Positions 886 to 53,500 of a stretch of DNA of 64,000 bases are shown piece by piece; the first letter of the stretch is position 1; every line of letters starts with the position of its first letter. Below the pieces are notes generated by a model. The model was given only the letters and a program-made list of their open reading frames with translations, had not been told where the DNA came from and made no database searches. The position numbers and the translations under genes are program-made. The stretch comes from Salpingoeca rosetta (Eukaryota; Protista; Choanoflagellata): positions 999,251-1,063,250 of the forward strand of contig JAWQFM010000027.1 of the NCBI GenBank assembly GCA_033442325.1. The letters are read 5' to 3'.

Positions 886-12503
<11,618 letters not shown>

Positions 12504-29475: not shown

Positions 29476-30866
29476 NNNNNNNNNNNNNNNNNNNNNNNNN
29501 NNNNNNNNNNNNNNNNNNNNNNNNNNNNNNNNNNNNNNNNNNNNNNNNNNNNNNNNNNNNNNNNNNNNNNNNNNNNNNNNNNNNNNNNNNNNNNNNNNNN
29601 NNNNNNNNNNNNNNNNNNNNNNNNNNNNNNNNNNNNNNNNNNNNNNNNNNNNNNNNNNNNNNNNNNNNNNNNNNNNNNNNNNNNNNNNNNNNNNNNNNNN
29701 NNNNNNNNNNNNNNNNNNNNNNNNNNNNNNNNNNNNNNNNNNNNNNNNNNNNNNNNNNNNNNNNNNNNNNNNNNNNNNNNNNNNNNNNNNNNNNNNNNNN
29801 NNNNNNNNNNNNNNNNNNNNNNNNNNNNNNNNNNNNNNNNNNNNNNNNNNNNNNNNNNNNNNNNNNNNNNNNNNNNNNNNNNNNNNNNNNNNNNNNNNNN
29901 NNNNNNNNNNNNNNNNNNNNNNNNNNNNNNNNNNNNNNNNNNNNNNNNNNNNNNNNNNNNNNNNNNNNNNNNNNNNNNNNNNNNNNNNNNNNNNNNNNNN
30001 NNNNNNNNNNNNNNNNNNNNNNNNNNNNNNNNNNNNNNNNNNNNNNNNNNNNNNNNNNNNNNNNNNNNNNNNNNNNNNNNNNNNNNNNNNNNNNNNNNNN
30101 NNNNNNNNNNNNNNNNNNNNNNNNNNNNNNNNNNNNNNNNNNNNNNNNNNNNNNNNNNNNNNNNNNNNNNNNNNNNNNNNNNNNNNNNNNNNNNNNNNNN
30201 NNNNNNNNNNNNNNNNNNNNNNNNNNNNNNNNNNNNNNNNNNNNNNNNNNNNNNNNNNNNNNNNNNNNNNNNNNNNNNNNNNNNNNNNNNNNNNNNNNNN
30301 NNNNNNNNNNNNNNNNNNNNNNNNNNNNNNNNNNNNNNNNNNNNNNNNNNNNNNNNNNNNNNNNNNNNNNNNNNNNNNNNNNNNNNNNNNNNNNNNNNNN
30401 NNNNNNNNNNNNNTTGTGTGTGTGTGTGTGTGTATGCTGCTTTGTGTGTGTGTGTGTGTGTGTGTATGCTGCTTTGTGTGTGTGTGTGCTGCTGTGTGTG
30501 TGTGTGTGTGTGTGCTGCTTTGTGTGTGTGTTGATTGATTGTTGTTTGTGTGTGCACTCTGTTCATGGGTGTTTATCAGTGCTGACCCACCAACTCTCCC
30601 CTCTCCTGCTGCTCCTCTTCATGCGGCTGTTGATGTGATGTTGATGTTGGGTCTGTCCAGGTGCATTTGGCGGGAGCGTGTGGGTGAAGTCTGTGCTGCA
30701 GTGGCTGGCGGCCTCGCGTGCTGGCAGACCAATGAAGTGCGTTGCGCTGCTGCCACTGCTGTTGATGTTCAATGGCACATGCAGTTGCTGTCACGCCTGT
30801 TGTGGTCTCACCTTTACAACAACACTTGCTTGCATGTTTGCACTGCACGCACATCTTTTGCACGCT

Positions 30867-39353: not shown

Positions 39354-41349
39354 TCATGGCAGGGTTGACAAGTGCGACAAATAGGCGCCCATGTCCACCT
39401 TCACAAACACCTTGGCAAATGGGAGGACCTGCGCCTCTTGCGAAACGACGTACTCCTCAAAGGCAAACGTGCCAGGTGTGGGCGTGGCCTGTAAGTTGGT
39501 GGCGCGTGTCACCTGCGCATAGTGGGTGTCTTGGCTTTCATCAAAAGGCTTCCCATAGTAGGAGCATTCATTCGAGCCATGGGGGTAATCTGCGGCCCGG
39601 GTGATCGGGTATGCCAGGCCAACGCTGGCAGCGCACAGGAGCATCACGTGCTCTCCATTTGCATTGGATGAGCGCAAATCACCATTCAACAAAACACGCG
39701 TGGAGTACCCTGCGGCATAGCTTGTCTGCGGTGTGAGGTAGATGCCAGATCCGAAGAAGCCACGGTCGCCCGGGCTGCTAAAGTTCGCTGCCCCGCACGC
39801 ACTGATGCTGTCAGCGACAGCCTCGTCACACCCATGGAAACCCACAAGGATGTTGACGTGCTTCAAGCCGGTGCGTGTTTTTGCAAACTGCATCTTGAGT
39901 TGTTTGAGCATGGCGCGCTTCTCTGGATCACCAAGCCCAAAGTCCTTGTTGAATTTGTTTGTTGTTTTCGTGTCACCACGACGCGTTGCCGACCGCTCCA
40001 CCTGCGCTTTGAACGCCCGCAGCATCATGGTGGACTTGATCATCTCCACGCGCGACAGGGTGAGGCCCGGCGTCATCCGGCTCTCTATCCACCGGTACAA
40101 GTCAGTGTCTGGTGGCAGTGGTGCTGAATACACTCCATGTTCACTTGGCCCCCTCCATGGAAGCTGCTCATCAAAGGCATCGTCGAGCCGCCATGCAGGG
40201 TGGTGCCATTCGTGGTCGCGCAACTGCCAAGACGGCATGACAGGTGGCGGATGCGCGGGCGCCTGCAGCAACAGATCGCCAACGCGATCGGACACTGGGT
40301 TCTGGCTTTCCCTGTGGTGCGTGGACGTGACGAGCTCGTCTGGGTCCTTGCCTGTCAGGTCCCCAAGCTTGTGAGCGGCTGGGTATTTCTCGTGGCGCTT
40401 CAGGTGTTTTGTGCTGAGGACGAGGTGGACATGGTCAATCCCTCTTGCTTCCCCTTGTAGCACAGACAGCACCTGTCATCAACACCGCAAGTGAGCAGAG
40501 GATGGAATGAGGGTGAAAAATCAAAGCTGGCCATTCGCTGGCAAGTGAAGGGACAACACAACGCAAGCTCACACACAACACACACACGCCCACAAGCACT
40601 CACATTCGCTCACAAACTGACTTTTGTCATGAACGGCAGGGCCTTGTGCTCTGCGCCAGAAGGCGCCCGCACCCAGACGTCCACTTCTCGTTCGCCTCGC
40701 AGCAGTCCGAGGCACTGCACGCCATCGTGTTCACAGAAAAAGGCGTCTGGCCACACCTTCAGCGTTGCGCCAAAAGACTTGTGCAACAAAGTCTGCACGT
40801 GTGGGAAGAAGCCAGGTGGTAATGCAAGTGCTTTGCTCTCGACCACCAGCAGTCGTCCACCGTAGACGGGCCAGAAGCCCGTTCGAGGCCAGGCGGTTGC
40901 GAGATCGGCCTTCTTCTCAACACGGCTCGGCAGCATGAATTGCCGCTGGCCATCGTTCGAAGGCGGCAGCTCGAAGCAGAGGAGCGTGTGCTGCAGCACG
41001 CTGATGACAAGATCTGCGGTGGCAATGCCTCGGAATGCGGTTTCCAGGTCCGTGAAGGTCACGACGCCTTTCTTTGTGATGGAGCCTTGCTGCACGCCAT
41101 CCGGCGTCAGCGCTCTCCCCAACACGTCATGAAGCAGCCAGTTCGGGTCGACGAAGACGAAGTCCGCCAGGGAGGGCGTGCTGGAGTACCAGAGCAGATC
41201 GCCGCGTGTGTGGAGGTACCTGTGGACATGCAAAAAGTATGGGTTAGCAGGGAGTGGAGGGTGTAAACGCGCAACACATGATTGAGGGATGAAAGTGTGA
41301 CTACCATGAAACTCCTCAACTCCTACGGCCAAACACACACGCACACACG

Positions 41350-41408
<59 letters not shown>

Positions 41409-44400
41409 ACACGCACACACACACACACACATACACACACCAAAAGCACACACGCACACATTGTACTTGCCTGAGCGTTTGGTGGAAGGTGCCCTCTTGG
41501 ATCGCGGAGATGAGGTCGATGCCATTCCCGCTGCCACGAACAAAGTCCAATAAATCACCCACGCTCCACATCGCCTTGTTCTTCACTGCTTTCTTTAAGG
41601 CCCCTGCCACTTCATTCACCACCTGTGGCACCAACACCTCTCGCCCTCTCAGCCAATGCCAATGGTCAACAAGCTGTGATCGGAGCACATCAAAACCGGC
41701 CTCGCCGCCCTGATGGCAGTTGAGAGTGATGAAGCTGTCTTGGATATCGACGATGTCGCCAAATAAGAGCGAAGAACCGGGTTTGGTTGATTGTCTCCTC
41801 AGGTCCGCGACCATCGCTGTACCCCAGGGCGGATGACCATGTTCATCAACAAGCGCCTTATCGCGAGCAAGATCCCTCTTGGTGCCCGCGATCACGACGC
41901 GCGGCTTCACCTCTTCCATGGCACCGCCGTCTGCCGTTGCTGTGGCTGCTGCAATGCCCTGCTGCAGTCGCGTGCAGATGAACTGCAGCCAGTAGTTGGC
42001 GCGCTCCTTCACATGTTCTTTAGGCTCAGAGAGGTCGACGCAGACGACAAAGGCAGCGAAGCGATCCGACATCATCAGCGTGTGGATGACGTGATATGCG
42101 AGCTGCCCACCAAAATCGTACACGCGAAGAGAAGCAGCGTTGTCACCGTCGCTGCCTTGGCTTGTGGTGTCTTTCAGCTTCATTTCACACACCCGAATGC
42201 CGGGTGTGCGCTCGTTTGAGCGGTCTGGGTCATTTGCTGGTTGGAAGATGGTCCGTGTGAAGCGGCGAAACAGACTGCCGGGAAGCGACTCAATCATGGT
42301 CGTCTTGCCGATGCCGTAGTCGCCGCAGACGAACACCTTCGCTGTCTCAAGAGGGACGGAGCCTGTTTCTAGCAGCCTGAGAAGATCGAGCCGGTCTTGA
42401 TAGGCGGCCTTGGCGGAAGAGTCAAACTTGTCCTCTGAATCAAAAGGCCTGAGGAGAAGAAGAAAGCAGAGTGGACGGTGAATGAGGTTCGGTGTGAAGG
42501 GTGGTTTGAACAAGAGTAAGTCTGTCACTGTACTGCTGTACGAACTCACGCGAAGACAACGTTGATGTCTGGCTGCTTGGTGCGGAGCGTGGCCAGTGCA
42601 CGGGCAACTGCAGTGGAGGATTTGAGCTTGTCCTCAAACAGCCTGTGATGCCGTGAAGAGGGAATGTGAGATGAAAGAAATTGAACTGAAATTGATTCGG
42701 TGCATGTGGGTGGAGCAAGGTCGCAAGCACACGAAACTCACCGAATCTTAGCCTTGGCGTCGATGTGTTGCAGCTGCTTCAGCACATTGACCATGCCACG
42801 CTCCGTGATACGATTGCGGCCAATGCTGTTGGATGAGATGGAGAAACAGGTGAGTTGGCGACAGGAACGAAGCGGGTCACTGTTGCAATCAGGAACACGC
42901 CCTACTTGCTTGCACCAGGTACGAGCGGCGGCAGTGACAGCGCAACAGCGACGCAGCCCATTTCCATCCATACATGTACATGTGTGCGTGTACACACTCA
43001 CCCGAGCCATGTGAGGGTCGTGTTGTGCTTCAGCATCTCCGCCAACGCCACAGCGCCCTCATCGCCGATGGAGTTGGCCCCCAGGCTGTCAAGATAATGT
43101 GATGCCACACAAAGCGATGGTGCCACATGGGTGAGGAAGAGTGAGTAAGTGCGTGATGATGATTGCTGTGGGTGGCAACACAGTCGTTGAACCACACATG
43201 GGCACATGTGCACATGATAAGGTGCAACAGCAGTGACGCAGCATACATGTGCATGTATGCATGTCCACACTCACTTGAGTCCTGTGAGGGTCGTGTTGTG
43301 CTTCAGCATCTCCGCCAACGCCACAGCGCCCTTATCGCCGACGCGGTTGCGTTCCAGGCTGTCCAGATGGTATAATGCCACGAAGGGCGATGATGCCACA
43401 TGGGTGAGGAAGAGTGCGTGAGTGATGATGATGATTGCTGTGGGTGGCAACACAGTCATTGAACTCATCCTACCCCACCACACGTGTGCACATGAAAAGG
43501 TGCAACAGGCAGTGACGCAGCATACATGTGCATGTGTGCGTGTACACACTCACAAGAGTCGTTCGAGGGTCGTGTTGTGCTTCAGCATCTCCGCCAACGC
43601 CACGGCGCCCTGGTTGCCGATGGAATTGCCCTCCAGGCTGTCAAGACGGTATGGCGAATGCCACACAGGGCGATGATGCCACATGGGTGAGGAAGAGGGA
43701 GTGAGTGCGTGATGATGATTGCTGTGGGTGTCAACACAGTCATCAACCACACATGTGCACATGATAAGGTGCAACGGCAGTGACGCAGCCCCTTTCCATC
43801 CACATATGTGTGCGTGTACACACTCACTAGAGTTCTTTGAGGGCCGTGTTGTGCTTCAGCATCTCCGCCAACGCCACAGCGCCCTCATCGCCGATGGAGT
43901 TGGCCCCCAGGCTGTCAAGATAATGTGATGCCACACAAAGCGATGGTGCCACATGGGTGAGGAAGAGTGAGTAAGTGCGTGATGATGATTGCTGTGGGTG
44001 GCAACACAGTCGTTGAACCACACATGGGCACATGTGCACATGATAAGGTGCAACGGCAGTGACGCAGCATACATGTGTGTGTGCGTGTACACACTCACTT
44101 GAGTCCTGTCATGGTCGTGTTGTGCTTCAGCATCTCCGCCAACACCACGGCGCCCTGGTCGCCTATGGAATTGTTGTCCAGGCTGTCAAGATGGTATGAT
44201 GCCACACAGGGGGATGATGCCACATGGGTGAGGAAGAGCGTGATGATGATTGCTGTGGGTGGCAACACAGTCATCAATCCACACATGTGCACGTGATAAG
44301 GTGCAACGACAGTGACGCAGCATACATGTGTGCATGTGTGCGTGTACACACTCACTAGAGTGTTTCGAGGGCCGTGTTGTGCTTCAACATCTCCGCCAAC

Positions 44401-45652
44401 GCCACGGCGCCCTCATCGCCGATGGAGTTGTTGTACAGGCTGTCAAGACGGTATGGTGGATGCCACACAGGGCGATGATGCCACATGGATGAGGAAGAGT
44501 GAGTGAGTGAGTGCGTGATGATGCTCGCTGTGGGTGGCAACACAGTCATCAACCACACATGTGCACGTGAGAAGGTGCAGGGGCAGTGACGCAGCATACA
44601 TGTGTGCGCATGTGTGCGTGTACACACTCACCTGAGTTCTTCGAGGGTCGTGTTGTGCTTCAGCATCTCCGCCAACGCCGCAGCGCCCTCATCGCCGATG
44701 GAATTCCATCGCAGGCTGTCCAGATGGTATAATGCCACGAAGGGCGATGATGCCACATGGATGAGGAAGAGTGAGTGCGTGCGTGCGTGATGATGATTGT
44801 TGTGGGTGGCAACACAGTCACCAATCCACACATGGGCACGTGTGCACGTGATAAGGTGCAACAGGCAGTGACGCAGCACACATGTGTGTGTGTGTGTGTG
44901 TGCGTGTACACTCACCTGAGTCGTTCGAGGGTCGTGTTGTGCTTCAACATCTCCGCCAACGCCACAGCGCCCTCAGGACCGATGGAGTTGCCCCACAGGC
45001 TGTGCAGACACACAAGAACCGCAGGGAGCGACGGTGAACACACGTCCAAACATGCGCAAGCAGGGGAGGAGAAAGGGGTGCAACATGCAACACCGCCATC
45101 CCAATCAACCATGCATATCACACGATGCAGATTCATCATCACCACGCACTAGAGTCGTTTGAGGCAGGTGTTGTCCTTGAGCGCCTCGGCCACCGCACGC
45201 GCCTCAATGGCGCCGAGGCCATAACCACCCAAGCTGTAATTCCAAATGGTGTGTGTCATGAAATGAGCAAGAAGACTGAGGATCGAGACAGAGCAAAACC
45301 ATGAGGGTGCCAGTCCCAACCTGCCACAAACACACACAGTGTGTCCAGGCGGTGCGAGGGGACAGGACACACACGTGAACACCCAACAGCAAGCCACACC
45401 ACGCTCATTGCAACACAAGGACAAGCCAAGCAGAGAGAGAGGGGAGAATAAGCACAACCACAACAAGTGTCCTTGTGTCCAACACATACATGTTCCAACA
45501 TGTCGTTTTGGTTGCTTTTGCACTCACTTCTCATAATCCCCACACGTGTTGTTGGCGATGGCCCTGATCTTGTGCTTCACCCCATCCATCAGCTTCGTCT
45601 GCGCCAGCAACGCCTCCACCTCCTCCCTCGCTCTCTTCTCTCCGCCGGACAT
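39354..45652 (-). CDS. ROCO protein: RI-like LRR array - Roc GTPase - COR - PARP-like ADP-ribosyltransferase; 15 exons, 1250 aa. Exons 45652-45528, 45233-45150, 44999-44916, 44715-44632, 44439-44356, 44182-44099, 43911-43828, 43637-43554, 43358-43275, 43085-43002, 42825-42742, 42642-42550, 42448-41471, 41219-40622, 40472-39354
   Basis: All junctions are phase-compatible and the spliced length is 3753 nt, or 1251 codons. Roc motifs: GDYGIGKTT (G1), RTPGI (G2), YDFGGQ (G3), GTKRD (G4). COR segments: YLHTRGDLLWY, VFVDPNWL, FMLPS, LPPGFFPHVQ. ART motifs: GFHGC, GFFGSGIYLT, YAAGYS, FEEYVV...QVLP. Confidence 0.93.
43002..44999 (-). repeat. Tandem array of eight exon+intron cassettes (84-nt LRR exon plus 173-200-nt homologous intron, period 257-284 bp)
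   Basis: The exon core cgtgttgtgcttca(g/a)catctccgccaac and intron motifs (gccacatgg.tgaggaagag; gatg..tgctgtgggtggcaacacagtc; aaggtgca...cagtgacgcagc; cactcac) recur in every unit. Confidence 0.97.
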
Positions 45653-46597
45653 GGCGACGGCGCGTCGTCTTTTCTCCTTGTGGCTTGTTGTGACGTGCTC
45701 GTGAGTGGCTGGAAGAAGAGACGACGACAAAATGGACGACGACTCAACGCGCTGCTTTTTGTTTCCTTTGTTTTGTGTGTGTTGTTGTTGTTTTGCGACT
45801 CAGCCATTGGACGATTCGCAAAACCTTACAGAGGTTATCCGCACAGCAGCGCTTCCGTGGAAGATGTTCGTCAACAATCTCTTCGAGCCCTCGTTGTCGA
45901 CAGGAACACAACAAACAAACAGGATGAAGTGCGTCCAGCCAGCAACCCGACTCTCTTGTCGCCGAAAGGAACAACAGCCGCGCCCTCCTCGCTTGGCCTT
46001 GCCTGGTTGGTACAACACACCAATGTCTGTAGCCACATCAACACCACAAACATCACCGCCGCTCCACCACCACCACCGTCAAGCGGGTCTCATCATCTTC
46101 ATCGAGCCATTTACTGAGGAAAGAACAGGTCCGCCACACAACCCACAAACAACGCCCCCAGCCCAACACACATCAACACACACACATCCACACATCCACA
46201 CACACAGCAGTGCCCAAATGCAACAGGAAGCCAAGCCAACCAAACAACAGCCAACCCCTCTGCACATCAAACAACACCCTCCAGTCACAAGCCAGAATCA
46301 AACACACACAGCAGCAGCAGCAGCACACATCCACCAACCACACCAAGAACGTGTTCAGCCGTACACAGCGCCAAACAATGAAAACAACAGGCAAGCACAA
46401 GAAGGGCGTGACATAAGCAAGCAAGCAAGCAGGCGAGAGGGAGAGTGAAGGAAGGGAAGAACAGAAGAGAAGAGAAGAGAAGAAGAGGGAAGAGAACAAG
46501 AAAGGGAAACAAGAGGAATGCGACAAAGGAAGCGACAGCCATTCAGCCATTCCTCCAACTGGTGCACAAGTTGACACGACACATCACAACATGGCGA

Positions 46598-49500
46598 CTA
46601 CGCGGACGAGCTAAGTGCCTCAACAGCGCGCTGCACGCGGGCGTGCGCCTCGGGATCCTGCATCAACTGCCCCAACACACCGTGGGCAGGCGAATCCTGC
46701 ATGTTCTACGAGAGGAAACGACACGAGGGCGTGAGAATGAGGAGAGGAAAGAGGAGGAGTGTGAGAATGAGGAGGAAGAGGAGGATGGGAAAGTGCACGA
46801 AGTACGCGACAGTCGCGCATATTCGAGGCAGCAAACACACACCCACACACACACACACATCACATAAATCACACACAACACAACCCACGCACCATGAGGC
46901 TGTGTACATGCCCTGGCAGTGGGGCTCGTCGACGGCGGCCGCGGGGGTGCCAATCACCTGCACAAACAAACGCCCGCACAATCTTCACCGGGCTCTCAGG
47001 CGCGGTCACGCGTGGATGTTGCCGACTGAAGCAACAACAAAAGGAAGGAGAGGTACAGGAAGCAATGGGGGAGGGGACGTGGGTCAGTCGGGAACAAGAA
47101 CGACAGGCGGCAGAGCACACCACCGACACATGCACACACACACACACACACACACATACACACATACACAGACACACACAAAACACGGTCGTAGCACTCA
47201 CGCTTGGAGGAGCTCGACGAGGTGTGTGAAGATGTACTTTGCCTCATCGTCGTCTTCTGTAATGGGCAGCCAGTCAAGCAGATGTGTCAGCACCTCGTCT
47301 GTGCAAGGGTTGGTGGTGGATGGGTGGGTAAAGAATAAGCGACGACAACGTGATAACAAGAGCAAACAACCAACGCAAAAGGACGGCGAAGGAGTGTACC
47401 AACGCACGCACACACACACACACACAACCACACACACCTCTGAGAGGCCGTGTGCTGGGTTGCGTGCAATCTTGACAAAGACGGAGATGCAGTTCTTGGT
47501 CGCGCTGGTGTTGGGCGATTCGCGGGAGCCGGGTACCCTGGATCACAGCGAGCAGCGACTCAACAGCCTGAACGCGGCAGGACGACAAGGGGTGGCAGTG
47601 AGGCTTGGCAAGCCGAAAGTGGAGAAAGGAGGGAAACGACGAAGCGACATGTTCGGACATGTTCACTCACTCACACACACATACACACACACACTCTCTC
47701 TCTTGACCTTGAGCGCACCTTGTGTGGATGTACGAGGGTTGTGGATCCTCCTCCTCAATCTGGGCGGTACTGGCTCGCATAATGCGCATGAGCTCGTGTG
47801 CATCCGGCGCAAACATGTCCTTGCAGACAGACACGCCCATCAGGCCGCGCAGCATGCGGTATTGCCTGTCGTTTGCGTGTTGGAAAATGTTCTTCATAAA
47901 CGGCACAGAATCGTTGTCGTAGTCCAAGAACCGCTCCTGCGCCACGTTGGCCAGCACATGCATGCGAACCAGAAACACGATGGCCACCTCCTTGCTGCCG
48001 CTGCAACCAGTGAGGAGTGCAAGCACACCATCACCTCGTCAACTGCCGCTGTTGTTGTCATGGCGTGCAGCACCACCACATCAACCGCCACAATCACGGC
48101 CAATCCCTCTTCCAACAACAGTGTGGTGGTCCACGAGCCAACAGCATCCAACGCAGTGAGCTGCTTGAAACCGGCAGTGTGCAGTGACGGCTGTGGCCGC
48201 GGGGTGTGATGCCTCGCTGGCACAAGATGAGGTGGCGGAACACAGCAGCAGTTGTGGTTGAAGCTGAGGTGATTGAGATGGGCAGGGAGAAGCACAGCTA
48301 GCAGCAGCGGGAAACTGGCTGGCAAAGGGCCTTGAGTGCACCGCCACAACGCCGCGCAGGACAGCAAGCAGTGCAGCTGTTGCTGTGTCAATGTGGTGTG
48401 GTTGACGATGGCGTGAACACGCATGCATGCACACACAGAANNNNNNNNNNNNNNNNNNNNNNNNNNNNNNNNNNNNNNNNNNNNNNNNNNNNNNNNNNNN
48501 NNNNNNNNNNNNNNNNNNNNNNNNNNNNNNNNNNNNNNNNNNNNNNNNNNNNNNNNNNNNNNNNNNNNNNNNNNNNNNNNNNNNNNNNNNNNNNNNTGCT
48601 GCAGCAGCAGAGCCTGCGCTGGGCCCGAATCGGTGTGAGCACGCGTGCAACGGGAGGGTGGGGAGCAAGATGCAGCGCCCCACTGGGCGGGGGGTGATGC
48701 GACCTGTGTGAAGACACAAAAGGAGAGAAGGGAGAACTGACGATTAGAAGCTGTCGTGCACGACGTGCCAGTGCAGCCCTGCATCAGCACATTGGGGGCG
48801 TTGAATGGTGTTGTATTGACGAGGCGTGGTCGGTGTGCGTGGTTGCTTCGACATGCGGGAGGGGCAACGAGTGCAAATGAATTCAATCACACACATACAC
48901 ACACACATACACACACACACACGTTTTGTGTGGCGCTGGGAGCGATGTCTGCTGGTGCGTGTCAACCAGCAGTGCCAGTGGTGTCAGCCATGGCGGCATG
49001 GAAGCGGAAGTGTGGTGGTGGGATCCTTCACCTCAGTGCACATTCCAGCCACCACGCTGGAGACCACGGGCTGGCTCACTGTCTCCATGCCCGTGCATGG
49101 CACCGACCACCGTCTGACAGCGGTGATGACAATGTCAGCGGCCTGCTCTGAAGCAAGCACACATCGTGACAGGGGTAAAGGAGAGAGAGTGTGTGTGTGG
49201 GGGGGGGTGTGATTGACGAGGGGAGGTGGTTGACAAGAACAAGGACGTGCTGAGGGGAGAACTTGGGGAGGAGGAGTGCAAACTGTGGTGTGCATGTCGC
49301 GTCACGCAGCGCATTGAGGTGCAGTGCAGTGGAGTGGAAATCCCAGGCAACACCCCCCACGTCATCAGCCATGCACATACCAATACAGAGCGAGAGAGAA
49401 GGAAGTGCCTCTTGTTGTCGTGGCACACGGTGATGGCACGCGCTCAAGGACACGGTGCTGTCATTCAAGCCACCATCATCATCCTCATCGTCAGCCTGCA
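46598..49500 (-). pseudogene. Importin-5 (IPO5/Kap121)-like degenerate gene relic
   Basis: Fragments: ADDEDDDG..DS; ANVAQERFLDY...VPFMKNIFQHANDRQYRMLRG[deletion]LMGVSVCKDMFAPDAHELMRIM...EEEDPQPSYI; SATKNCISVFVKIAR; DEVLTHLLDWLPITEDDDEAKYIFTHLVELL. Frameshifts at about 47535 and 46965. Large internal parts are missing. TAG at 46598-46600. Confidence 0.7.
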
Positions 49501-50539: not shown

Positions 50540-53500
50540 ATGCCCACTGTTCCTTTCTCGACTTCTGCTTCTTGTTCTTCTTTTTCTTGGGCACTATTCG
50601 TTCGCTCCATGCGTCAGGCAACCAAGTATGTGAACGTGGGACGCGGTGTCCTGTTTGTGGTGACAGTGCTGTCGGTTGTTGCTGTTGCTGTCTTGTTGTG
50701 GGTGTGGATGTGGACTCCCTTCTTTCCTTCTTCTTGTGGCACAAGGATGTGTGCAGGGGGCTGTGGGTCTGCTGAAAGTGGTGGTTTCGTCGTCGTCAGG
50801 CCGTCGTTGTTGTGCTTGGCTGACGTGAGCATGTGCTGTTCTCTTGTGATTGGACAAGGCAGTGGCCTGCAGAAACCTAACGACGCTCTTGAGAGTGCAC
50901 TGGCAACACGTGCCGCTGACACACGCACACCACAAGGCAAGCGACAAGCAGTGTCACTCACGGCCACCTGCGAGGTGGGTGCAATCACACCTCCGCTCAT
51001 GTGTATGTTGTGCATGTGTGTGTGTGTGTATCAGTGCACGGTGGTGATCCGATATCCAAACCACAACCACTGCTGTCACTGCTGCTGCCTTGCTGCTGCT
51101 GGTGCTGCTGCTGTTGGCACGTGTATTCTCACGGTTGCATCGTCTCTTCCTCCCACGCAAACAACAAACAGACAGGAATCGGCAAGTGAGAGTGGCGGAG
51201 ACCAAGGCACCAGCAACACAGAAGGCCGCGTTTGAGTGGGACGCACCTCCACAGCGGTACCGGGCGAGCAATCACAGCATTTGCGCTGACATCGGTCAGT
51301 CTTCTCTCGTGATTACAGTCACACGTCATTCATCCCCCAGTTTGCCATCAAGTCAGTTTACATGGCATGCACGCTGTAGGTGCTCATCACCTGCCCCATG
51401 CACACGTGGTTTTCACACACACACACACCCCACAACAGCCCGCTTGCGCGGCATCATCTCGCTGGACATGAGTGTTGGGGATGATGATGGAATGCCCCCG
51501 TCTCATCATGTCTCATCATGACAGTGAGCGACGTGTGTGTGTGTGTGTGTTTCTCGTTTCGCTCGGCAACCGTGTGATGACGGCTTATCACTCTTGCGCA
51601 CGTTCCCTCGCTCACTGCAACACCCATCTCGCTACTGTTAACGACCAGGTTGCCATCCACTGGATGCCCTTGGTTGCGTCGATGGGGCAGAGTGTTGGTG
51701 ACATTGGCAAGATGCTGCTCGTGGCGGGACAGAGCGAATGCTTTCAAAAGTATGCGCACACTGTATGTGTAAGCGTGTGTGAATATGTGTCGTCGACGTG
51801 GTCATTCTGCCATGCGTCTGCTGTGGGTTCTTTGCTTGCAATCGTTTGATCTTGTGCTACGATGTGTTGTCCTGATCTCTGTTCCTCGTGTGTGTTTGGG
51901 CCACAGGGTACGCCTTCAGCTGAAGAGAGGAAGGGGAGGCGCTGCTCCGGCACAAGGATGATGGTGACATGAGGTGCGACCACCGAATTGTGTTTTTGTT
52001 ACGGGTGCATTGCCGCCGCCGCCGCTGCTGCTGCTGCTGCTGCTGGTGGTGGAGGTGTGCACACTGAANNNNNNNNNNNNNNNNNNNNNNNNNNNNNNNN
52101 NNNNNNNNNNNNNNNNNNNNNNNNNNNNNNNNNNNNNNNNNNNNNNNNNNNNNNNNNNNNNNNNNNNNNNNNNNNNNNNNNNNNNNNNNNNNNNNNNNNN
52201 NNNNNNNNNNNNNNNNNNNNNNNNGTGTGTGTATGTGTGTGTGTACCCGTATGTGTGTGTGTGTGCGTGTGTGTGCAGCAGTTCGTTGCAGATATCTCCC
52301 AACACTCCCCCCATCCCCTTTCATCCGCGCGTCTCACCACACAACAAACGCAGCCATCGTCTCCACCACAACCACCACTGTTACCAGAACGCACTGCCCC
52401 GAGATGCCGCTGCACTATCGCACTGCCAATGACGGCCCTGATGTCAGCGATCACCGCACGGCATATCCGTCGATCCTCTTCGCACGTGCCCATCGTTCAA
52501 GGTGAAGACCTGCCAACACAGCAACAGCAACAGCAACGGCGTGGAATGGCGTGCAACCGAAGCATGATGACCTCACACTCTCTGCCTGCTTGTGTGTTAT
52601 GATTGCGTGTTCATGCGTGCGTGCATCTATGGCAGGTGTACGTGTATCCTCTGACTGCTGATGAAGAAGCCACCTCTGCCAGCCATCTACCGCGCCATCC
52701 GAACCGCCATCCGTGACGGCCCATACAGCACCGATGACCTGTCCAAGGCTTGCCTCTTCGTTCCAAGCACAGACGTACCGTGCTGGTGTGTGTGTGTGTG
52801 TGTGTTTGTGTTTGTGTTGTGTGTGTGTGTGTGTCGCGTCGGTGCAGATGCACGGGCTTCCACAGCCGTCACCATCACCACCACCACCTCATAATTGTGT
52901 GTGCGTGCTTGTGACTGAAAGATTGCATGCACGACAAGTACTCTGACAACATTGAGTCGATTCATCCCGTGAGCGCAGCCATCGAGCGCAATCTCTCCAG
53001 CTGAGGTGGTGGTTTGTTGTTGCTTGTAGTGCTGGTGGTGCTGGTGGTGCTTGTGGTTCTTGGTGTCGTGCGTGTGAGAGGACCTGTGTTCATGGCTGCC
53101 TTCCAAACACACACACACACACACACACACACAACAATACATGTGATGCATGGCAGACTTGCGTATTGGAATGAGGGCCGCAACCACATCCTGTTTGAGT
53201 ACAGCGACGCACCATGTCTCCCCTGGGATGCAGAACACGGCATTCTTGCAAAGGTACAATGTGTATGTGTGTGTTGGAACATGACTGTGCGTGCCTGCGC
53301 TCACCATCTACGACTGCTGTTGCTTGCCGCCTTGTTTCGCATCACCACCTGCATCAGGTTGGCCTGAGCGAATTCCACCATCGCAATGGCCTCGGTGTGT
53401 CCATGCCACTCTGCTCCCTGGACGGCATTCATTCACACCGGAGTAACGACGCGTTCCGCCCGCACAAACAGGAAATACCTCGTCATCTTCAGGTCTGTGC

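What the first reader, a model, noticed from the sequence alone, without database searches (positions are those of the whole stretch)
43002..44999. Hypervariable ligand-facing residues sit exactly across each splice junction
Seen: the exon core (NSIGDEGAVALAEMLKHNT) is nearly invariant. The spliced LxxLxLxxN strands, however, read LKRL-Y-LWGN, LERL-S-LRWN, LEEL-S-LYNN, LETL-Y-LDNN, MTGL-N-LGAN, LKEL-Y-LEGN, LERL-F-LERN, LTGL-N-LGAN and LTWL-G-IGRN. The central x codon is split, with 2 nt from the upstream exon plus C from the next. Established: the x positions of LxxLxLxxN form the concave binding surface of LRR solenoids. Inference: diversifying selection acts on the binding face. Each strand takes half its residues from each flanking exon, so skipping or re-pairing exons would create new strands rather than just shorter arrays.
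Basis: partly seen in the sequence, partly recalled or inferred. Interest (0 to 1): 0.8.

Follow-up and report, generated by a model that had tools for sequence, protein, structure and literature searches.

The report
Fast-evolving LRR strands split by introns
In a choanoflagellate (Salpingoeca rosetta) LRR-Roc-COR-PARP gene, eight near-identical 84-base exons each encode one leucine-rich repeat. The five exposed residues of every beta-strand, which straddle the introns, have changed far faster than the neighbouring introns and silent sites. This is a real case of diversifying selection, but the gene architecture is already known from animal NLR genes and brown-algal ROCO genes.

Summary
On the minus strand, 43002-44999 holds eight 84-nt phase-2 exons of gene PTSG_09285 of Salpingoeca rosetta. 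My 15-exon model equals the deposited 1250-aa protein.

Diversifying selection is supported:
- The five x codons have pN 0.58, against intron divergence 0.12 and core dS 0.17.
- The x-codon bases need at least 20 changes in 15 sites, against 48 in 167 for the adjoining introns (Poisson 3e-8).
- Silent third positions interleaved between the x codons have pi 0.16, against 0.65 at x-codon positions 1 and 2.
- My own M1a/M2a site model gives 2dlnL of 33-40 and omega about 12. It picks exactly those codons.
- Null simulations reached at most 14.5.

An AlphaFold model puts every split codon inside a beta-strand.

The architecture is not new. A fish NLRC3 gene has the identical exon register, Hoss 2019 describes it for NLRs, and brown-algal ROCO genes show LRR-exon shuffling with positive selection.

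Use of exon skipping or re-pairing is not shown. RNA reads were swamped by paralogs, and at DNA level each intron travels with both halves of its strand.

The scan's first-stage readers had noted this same stretch several times, and similar genes on other pieces of this genome.

The parts
45528..45652 (-). Exon 1 (start codon at 45652). Encodes an N-terminal helical cap and ends in phase 2.
   Evidence: Gene model, identical to deposited protein P0143.
45150..45233 (-). First, divergent 84-nt LRR exon (LGGYGLG...LKRL plus TA).
   Evidence: A positional orthologue is present in paralogues.
44916..44999 (-). Cassette 1 (LWGN...LERL-S).
44632..44715 (-). Cassette 2 (LRWN...LEEL-S).
44356..44439 (-). 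Cassette 3 (LYNN...LETL-Y).
44099..44182 (-). Cassette 4 (LDNN...MTGL-N).
43828..43911 (-). Cassette 5 (LGAN...LKEL-Y).
43554..43637 (-). Cassette 6 (LEGN...LERL-F).
43275..43358 (-). Cassette 7 (LERN...LTGL-N).
43002..43085 (-). Cassette 8 (LGAN...LTWL-G).
42742..42825 (-). Terminal, divergent 84-nt LRR exon (IGRNRITERG...).
   Evidence: Conserved in paralogues.
42550..42642 (-). 93-nt linker exon, phase 2 at both ends.
41471..42448 (-). Roc GTPase exon. Its donor is GC (GCAAGT).
   Evidence: Pfam PF08477, E 3e-9.
40622..41219 (-). COR exon.
   Evidence: Pfam PF16095, E 1.5e-8, 35.1 bits, just under the curated cut-off of 35.3. PF16095 is also in the precomputed domains of P0143.
39355..40472 (-). 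Last exon, with a PARP-type catalytic domain.
   Evidence: Pfam PF00644, E 3e-6.
43019..43251 (-). Recent duplication or conversion tract, equal to 43845-44077 with 1 mismatch in 233 nt. It covers the cassette core, x7 and x8, and most of the intron. With gaps it continues to the upstream strand half.
   Evidence: Intron pair I4_5/I7_8 is 98% identical, against a mean of 88%.

Best explanation
The stretch is the ligand-binding sensor part of a Salpingoeca rosetta ROCO protein (PTSG_09285). The protein has an N-terminal cap, ten RI-class 28-residue LRRs, Roc, COR and a PARP-type domain.

Eight of the LRRs arose by tandem duplication of an exon-plus-intron unit of about 279 bp, or were homogenised as such a unit. 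Since then, the framework residues that build the solenoid have been kept by purifying selection. The five solvent-facing residues of each beta-strand (x2, x3, x5, x7, x8 of LxxLxLxxN) have been replaced repeatedly under positive, diversifying selection. Each repeat therefore presents a different patch on the concave face.

The intron sits in the x5 codon (2 nt | 1 nt) because that is the ancestral register of RI-class LRR exons, shared with vertebrate NLRC3. An invariant strong intronic donor (GTGAGTGT) lets the last two exon bases vary freely.

Shown here: the anatomy, the excess of replacement changes, and the position in the strand. Inferred: that the concave face binds a variable ligand and that the protein is a sensor-switch-effector (immune-like) receptor.
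For: - Gene model and identity with PTSG_09285.
- Domains.
- RI/NOD2/NLRP3-like sequence and fold: and (TM 0.73-0.82).
- Introns are 83-98% identical, so the units are young or homogenised.
- x codons have pN 0.578 (dN 1.10), against core pN 0.065, core dS 0.166 and intron JC distance 0.128.
- Intron-centred test: 20 minimum changes in 15 x-codon bases against 48 in 167 intron sites, Poisson 3.4e-8. pN(x) exceeds the intron distance in 20 of 21 pairs.
- The same pattern holds in paralogue PTSG_08728, P 1.7e-5.
- Interleaved silent third positions have pi 0.157, against 0.646 at x-codon positions 1 and 2.
- M2a against M1a gives 2dlnL 33-40 and omega2 11-13, with sites x7, x8, x3, x5 (and x2) on two trees and three codon-frequency models.
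- With 30 cassettes from four paralogues, 2dlnL is 93.
- Null simulations reach at most 7.8 on a single tree and 14.5 with recombination.
- Split-codon residues 70, 98 ... 322 lie inside each predicted strand.
- A fish NLRC3 gene has the same exon register.
Against: - The repeats recombine, as shown by a 233-nt tract with one mismatch and mosaic introns. A single-tree site model is therefore mis-specified. Recombinant null data gave an LRT above 5.99 in 3 of 10 runs, so the nominal p-values are too small.
- The sample is only 8 sequences of 28 codons.
- My site model fixes the topology and scales the branch lengths. It is not codeml.
- Paralogue PTSG_09099 shows no significant excess.
- Introns may be under some constraint or homogenised, which would inflate the ratio.
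- No coordinates were available, so surface exposure is inferred from secondary structure and LRR geometry, not measured.
- No ligand and no function is known, and the gene was nearly silent in the two RNA runs read.
Confidence: 0.72

Rival explanations
1. Relaxed constraint plus concerted evolution. On this reading the array is old and the x positions are merely unconstrained (omega about 1) and saturated. Gene conversion keeps the core and introns alike, so the 'neutral' yardsticks understate the age and there is no positive selection.
For: Gene conversion or recent duplication does act in the array. The older paralogue array PTSG_13043 has x-codon pN (0.48) no higher than its intron distance (0.54). 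Recombination inflates the LRT.
Against: Conversion tracts cannot skip single codons. Silent third positions of the framework codons that sit between the x codons (L1, N4, L24, L27 and the split codon's C) have pi 0.157, like the introns, while x-codon positions 1 and 2 have pi 0.646. L1 is CTG and L27 is CTC in all 8 cassettes. The x codons lie 2-10 nt from introns that are 88% alike.
Confidence: 0.12
2. The diversity is imported rather than made in place. Strand variants are moved in from the many paralogous LRR genes of the family by ectopic recombination or conversion, so the excess reflects sampling of a family-wide pool of half-strands rather than repeated point substitution in this array.
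For: Cassettes 1 and 8 pair with cassettes 1 and 8 of PTSG_08728, while inner cassettes mix between genes in the tree. The same core is shared by several paralogues. In PTSG_09099 the upstream half ATI is paired with both DN and KS. RNA reads show many further strand variants on the same core (tables 5c and 7).
Against: Imported tracts would carry their flanking intron and core differences with them, yet introns next to very different strands are 6-12% apart. Retaining different strands in each repeat still needs selection for diversity, so this is a source of variation, not an alternative to selection.
Confidence: 0.12
3. Assembly artefact. On this reading the array is a chimera of reads from several paralogues, and the 'hypervariable' positions are paralogue differences stitched into one locus.
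For: The assembly is a draft with N gaps elsewhere in the window. Short-read contigs break inside the array, and no piece spans it.
Against: There is no gap between 42700 and 45300. Independent DNA contigs match unique stretches of the array with no differences (table 8, run X4). The whole gene aligns colinearly with PTSG_08728 at 83.8% over 6.6 kb, and both have eight cassettes. The reading frame and splice sites are intact throughout.
Confidence: 0.04

Closest known systems
Exonic modularity of NLR LRR domains in animals (NOD/NLRC: one 28-aa LRR per exon; Hoss et al. 2019, PMC6642158)
   Same: The exons are 84 nt, symmetric and RI-class, with the exon-exon border at a fixed place inside the beta-strand. 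I verified the identical register (1 base + 27 codons + 2 bases, L-x-x-N ... L-x-x-L) in 13 consecutive exons of an anchovy NLRC3 gene. The LRR domain resembles NOD2, NLRP3 and ribonuclease inhibitor in sequence and fold.
   Different: The gene has no NACHT domain. The switch is Roc-COR and the output is a PARP-type domain. The organism is a choanoflagellate. The introns are short (173-200 nt) and co-duplicated with the exons. The third base of the split codon is C here and mostly T in the fish.
LRR-ROCO genes of brown algae with exon shuffling (Zambounis et al. 2012, PMC3341825; Teng et al. 2024, PMC11378527)
   Same: It is a ROCO protein with an N-terminal LRR array, one LRR per phase-2 exon and tandem exon duplication. 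Positive selection falls on a handful of concave-face residues, and the proposed role is as a variable receptor.
   Different: The brown-algal exons are 72 nt (24 aa, not RI-class) and hold the whole LxxLxLxxN strand inside one exon. Here the strand is split across the junction. Alternative splicing of cassettes is reported there and not shown here. There is no PARP output in the algal genes, as far as those papers describe them.
Hypervariable xxLxLxx positions of plant resistance-gene LRRs (established knowledge, from memory)
   Same: Replacement changes are concentrated at the solvent-exposed x positions of the strand, with omega above 1.
   Different: In plants the comparison is between alleles or paralogous genes. 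Here it is between repeats of one gene, and plant LRRs are not encoded one per exon.
Ribonuclease inhibitor (RNH1)
   Same: It has the same repeat class and horseshoe fold. From memory, its ligand contacts come from the strand and the strand-to-helix loop positions.
   Different: RI has alternating 28- and 29-residue repeats, with two per exon. It has no enzymatic or GTPase domains.

Membership tests
RI-class (ribonuclease-inhibitor-like) LRR | Repeat length of 28-29 residues with consensus LxxLxLxxNxIgdxGaxxLaxxLkxNxx | tested here: met
   Ten consecutive 28-residue repeats. Pfam LRR_6 PF13516 is among the precomputed domains of P0143.
RI-class (ribonuclease-inhibitor-like) LRR | Horseshoe of parallel strands and helices resembling RI and NLR LRR domains | tested here: met
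   AF2 model with pLDDT 82 and alternating E/H elements. Foldseek TM 0.73-0.82 to NOD2, RI, NLRP3 and LRRC34. phmmer E 1e-29 to 1e-47.
ROCO proteins | Roc GTPase directly followed by a COR domain | tested here: met
   PF08477 is above its curated cut-off (37.5 bits against 27). PF16095 on the COR exon scores 35.1 bits, just under its cut-off of 35.3, but PF16095 is in the precomputed domains of the full protein P0143. The two lie on consecutive exons of one reading frame.
NLR (NACHT-LRR) receptors | NACHT / NB-ARC STAND NTPase domain | tested here: not met
   There is no PF05729 among the domains of P0143, although it is listed for the true NLR hits in the same table. Roc-COR occupies that place.
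NLR-type LRR exon architecture (Hoss 2019) | One 28-aa LRR per 84-nt exon, with the border at a fixed position inside the beta-strand | tested here: met
   The register is identical in a fish NLRC3 gene. It is conserved in three paralogues.
Brown-algal ROCO LRR exon-shuffling system | 72-nt exons, each holding a whole 24-aa LRR strand | tested here: not met
   The exons are 84 nt and the strand is split at x5. The algal register is taken from PMC3341825 and PMC11378527.
Brown-algal ROCO LRR exon-shuffling system | Positive selection on concave-face residues of the repeated exons | tested here: met
   with the recombination caveat.
Brown-algal ROCO LRR exon-shuffling system | Alternative splicing of the tandem LRR exons | tested here: inconclusive
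   RNA reads laid on the array come mostly from paralogues, and the gene's unique exons are nearly uncovered. Deposited models of two paralogues skip 5 and 4 intact cassettes, which may be annotation error.

The most novel reading that the evidence does not exclude
The split-strand cassettes are actually used combinatorially. Regulated or stochastic skipping of the interchangeable phase-2 exons, or frequent germ-line re-pairing, would give a choanoflagellate ROCO-PARP family a repertoire of receptors with novel junction strands. The shared exon register with vertebrate NLRC3 would mean that this NLR-type LRR cassette, and its potential for diversification, predates animals.
Probability: 0.12. 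Interest if true: 0.8.

Novelty: new member of a known kind. Interest (0 to 1): 0.45.

Why it matters
Choanoflagellates are the closest living relatives of animals, and little is known about how they recognise microbes. A family of LRR-Roc-COR-PARP genes whose ligand-facing residues evolve under strong diversifying selection is a concrete candidate for a pre-animal, NLR-like sensing system. The exact sharing of the 84-nt split-strand exon register with a vertebrate NLRC3 gene suggests that the NLR-type LRR cassette is older than animals and moved between receptor scaffolds. The case also gives a clean internal control for positive selection between repeats, because introns and interleaved silent sites lie only a few bases from the selected codons.

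Tried and rejected
1. RNA evidence for splicing and cassette skipping. Reads of two raw RNA runs and one RNA contig set lie only on exons and on the expected strand. Most are 95-99% alike, carry fixed differences, and have foreign letters exactly at the x-codon stretches, so they are spliced reads of paralogues. The gene's unique exons have depth 0-2. This gives no conclusion on skipping.

2. The first null simulation timed out. A lighter version ran, but with only 10 + 10 replicates, so the empirical bound is coarse.

3. A coral NLRC3-like protein (P0180) was not on record for its locus. An anchovy NLRC3 was used instead.

5. The first regular expression for cassettes found nothing because of a register error. 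It was corrected.

6. Mapping of the variable sites onto surface coordinates was not possible, because the structure tool returns no coordinates. Only secondary structure was used.

7. A literature search for the four gene names found nothing. A search for choanoflagellate ROCO/PARP LRR work found nothing relevant.

8. I considered and rejected a mutational hotspot at exon ends. No known mechanism fits, and the third positions in between are quiet.
Full report
**What is there**

The window is eukaryotic DNA of about 55% GC, with GT-AG introns, CA microsatellites and N gaps. The finding lies on the minus strand. Tandem Repeats Finder reports a 279-bp period, 7.5 copies and 81% matches over 42969-45003.

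A scan for AG + 84 nt + GTRAG with an open phase-2 frame finds eight near-identical exons and a ninth, divergent one. A tenth lies upstream at 45150-45233.

Joining 15 exons gives an open frame of 1250 codons. It is identical, residue for residue, to the deposited protein PTSG_09285 of Salpingoeca rosetta (P0143). The paralogue loci come from assembly GCA_000188695.1.

Downstream of the LRR exons, on the same strand, lie a Roc GTPase, a COR domain and a PARP-type catalytic domain. The COR hit (35.1 bits) falls just under Pfam's curated cut-off of 35.3, but PF16095 is also listed for the full protein. The stretch is therefore the sensor end of an LRR-Roc-COR-PARP (ROCO) protein.

**The observation**

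Every LRR exon begins with C, which completes a codon whose first two bases end the preceding exon. Those two bases are AG, AG, TA, AA, TA, TT, AA and GG for the eight cassettes.

Fourteen of the 28 positions are invariant among the eight cassettes. The five positions of highest entropy are exactly x7, x8, x2, x3 and x5 of LxxLxLxxN.

**Age of the array**

The seven introns between the cassettes align over their whole length and are 83-98% identical, with mean pairwise difference 0.117. The unit that was duplicated, or is being homogenised, is therefore exon plus intron.

One tract, 43019-43251, equals 43845-44077 with a single mismatch in 233 nt. It runs from the cassette core through x8 and x7 and most of the intron. 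With gaps it continues to the upstream half of the strand. So at DNA level an intron travels together with both halves of 'its' strand, and the breakpoints fall in the invariant core.

**Test of diversifying selection**

1. Nei-Gojobori counts over all pairs. The five x codons have pN 0.578 (dN 1.10) and pS 0.258. The 23 framework codons have pN 0.065 and dS 0.166. The introns have JC distance 0.128.

2. Intron-centred units, that is, the two strand halves with the intron between them.
   - pN at the x codons exceeds the intron distance in 20 of 21 pairs.
   - The tree-free minimum number of changes is 20 in 15 x-codon bases, against 48 in 167 intron sites (Poisson 3.4e-8).
   - Paralogue PTSG_08728 gives 17/15 against 55/167 (1.7e-5).
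   - PTSG_09099, a two-cassette higher-order repeat, is not significant.
   - PTSG_13043, an old array with saturated introns, shows no excess.

3. Interleaved control. The silent third positions of the framework codons that sit between the x codons have pi 0.157. Positions 1 and 2 of the x codons have pi 0.646, close to saturation. This argues against an old, neutrally drifting strand region whose surroundings were homogenised, because conversion tracts cannot skip single codons.

4. A codon site model that I wrote (GY94-type M0/M1a/M2a, with fixed topology and one scale factor on the branch lengths).
   - It gives 2dlnL of 33.1 and 33.6 on two trees with F3x4, 34.0 with F1x4 and 40.5 with equal frequencies.
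   - Omega2 is 11-13 for 16-20% of sites.
   - The posterior is above 0.95 at x7, x8, x3 and x5 in every run, and 0.51-1.00 at x2.
   - With 30 cassettes from four paralogues, 2dlnL is 93. Codons 5 and 8, in the strand-to-helix loop, join the list.

5. Null data simulated under M1a gave LRT values up to 7.8. An extreme recombinant null gave values up to 14.5, with 3 of 10 above the 5% chi-square limit. The nominal p-values are therefore too small. The observed values still lie well above all 20 null runs.

**Structure**

The LRR part matches RI-like proteins, NOD2, ribonuclease inhibitor and NLRP3 by sequence, with E 1e-29 to 1e-47.

A single-sequence AlphaFold model of residues 1-345 has mean pLDDT 82 and pTM 0.79. 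The split-codon residues 70, 98, 126 ... 322 each lie within a predicted strand. Foldseek gives TM 0.73-0.82 to NOD2, RI, NLRP3 and axonemal RI-like proteins.

In an LRR strand the conserved leucines face the core, so x3, x5 and x7 must face the concave surface, with x2 and x8 at its rims. This last step is inference from established LRR geometry. No coordinates were available.

**Comparison with what is known**

Hoss et al. 2019 (PMC6642158) state two things for human NLRs. The exon-exon border always lies at the same place within the beta-sheet, and NOD/NLRC genes encode one 28-aa LRR per exon.

I checked this directly. An anchovy NLRC3 gene (P0164, locus L004) has 13 consecutive 84-nt exons in exactly the register seen here: one base, 27 codons starting L-x-x-N and ending L-x-x-L, then two bases. 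The split x5 codon is thus a shared property of RI-class LRR exons.

Three S. rosetta paralogues have it too.

Brown-algal ROCO genes are the closest functional precedent. They have one LRR per 72-nt phase-2 exon, exon shuffling, positive selection on four concave-face sites and alternatively spliced cassettes (PMC3341825, PMC11378527). There, however, the whole strand lies inside one exon.

The gene is not an NLR, since it has no NACHT domain.

No paper in the library mentions these four genes.

**Exon skipping and re-pairing**

Because all cassettes are symmetric (phase 2-2) with the same first base, any skip stays in frame and makes a hybrid strand.

Whether it happens is open. The deposited models of PTSG_08728 and PTSG_09099 treat 1555-nt and 1352-nt stretches as introns. 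These stretches contain five and four intact cassettes with perfect splice sites. This could be real skipping or an annotation error.

RNA reads laid on 42500-45700 cover exons only, and the first mates lie on the plus strand, as expected for a minus-strand gene. However:
- Most reads are 95-99% alike.
- They carry fixed differences.
- They show foreign letters exactly at the x-codon stretches.
- The unique terminal LRR exon has depth 0-0.2.
- All reads on the linker exon differ from the window at 42609.

The reads therefore come mainly from paralogues, and this gene was nearly silent in those samples.

**Further small points**

- The invariant C limits x5 to the 15 amino acids that have NNC codons.
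- The last two exon bases depart from the usual AG at the donor, while the intronic GTGAGTGT is invariant.
- The x residues are rich in E, G, R, N, T, W and Y.

**Verdict**

The architecture is a known one in a new lineage and a new domain context. Combinatorial use of the cassettes remains untested.

First-stage readers of this scan had already noted this same stretch several times, and similar LRR-Roc-COR-ART genes on other pieces of the genome.

Noticed in passing
L002:2301-3855 (PTSG_08728) and L003:2486-3837 (PTSG_09099): Stretches annotated as long introns in two paralogues contain five and four intact 84-nt LRR cassettes with AG|C acceptors and GTGAGTGT donors. Both genes therefore really have 8-9 cassettes. 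The deposited proteins (1101 and 1133 aa) skip them. This is either annotation error or real exon skipping.
   Followed up: partly
L004:17675-35860 (anchovy NLRC3): Thirteen consecutive 84-nt LRR exons have exactly the same split-codon register as the choanoflagellate cassettes. The introns are kilobases long, and the third base of the split codon is mostly T.
   Followed up: yes
window 41220-41470, minus strand: The intron after the Roc exon has a GC donor (GCAAGT) instead of GT. The deposited protein uses the same junction.
   Followed up: partly
L003:1826-3625: PTSG_09099 carries a two-cassette higher-order repeat (LKSS.../LDNN... alternating), with introns 1-3% apart. The upstream strand half ATI is found paired with both DN and KS downstream halves, which is a trace of re-pairing at DNA level.
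   Followed up: partly
window 39600-46025 versus L002:617-7072: PTSG_09285 and PTSG_08728, which lie on different scaffolds, align colinearly at 83.8% over 6.6 kb, including introns and flanks. Cassettes 1 and 8 pair between the genes, while inner cassettes do not. This suggests an eight-cassette array that predates the gene duplication and was later reshuffled internally.
   Followed up: partly
window 45528-45700 and 42550-42642: RNA reads on exon 1 and the linker exon mostly carry fixed differences from the window (45574, 45588, 45659 and 42609). Close paralogues are therefore expressed much more strongly than this gene in the two RNA runs read.
   Followed up: no
window 44497-44517 and 44769-44789: Within two introns, many RNA and DNA reads end with loose ends that run into GT-rich repeats. 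This is probably a short dispersed or low-complexity element shared with other loci.
   Followed up: no
window 8225-9104, 11191-11290, 29476-30413, 48441-48596, 52069-52224: There are five assembly gaps (runs of N) in the window. None lies inside the gene.
   Followed up: no
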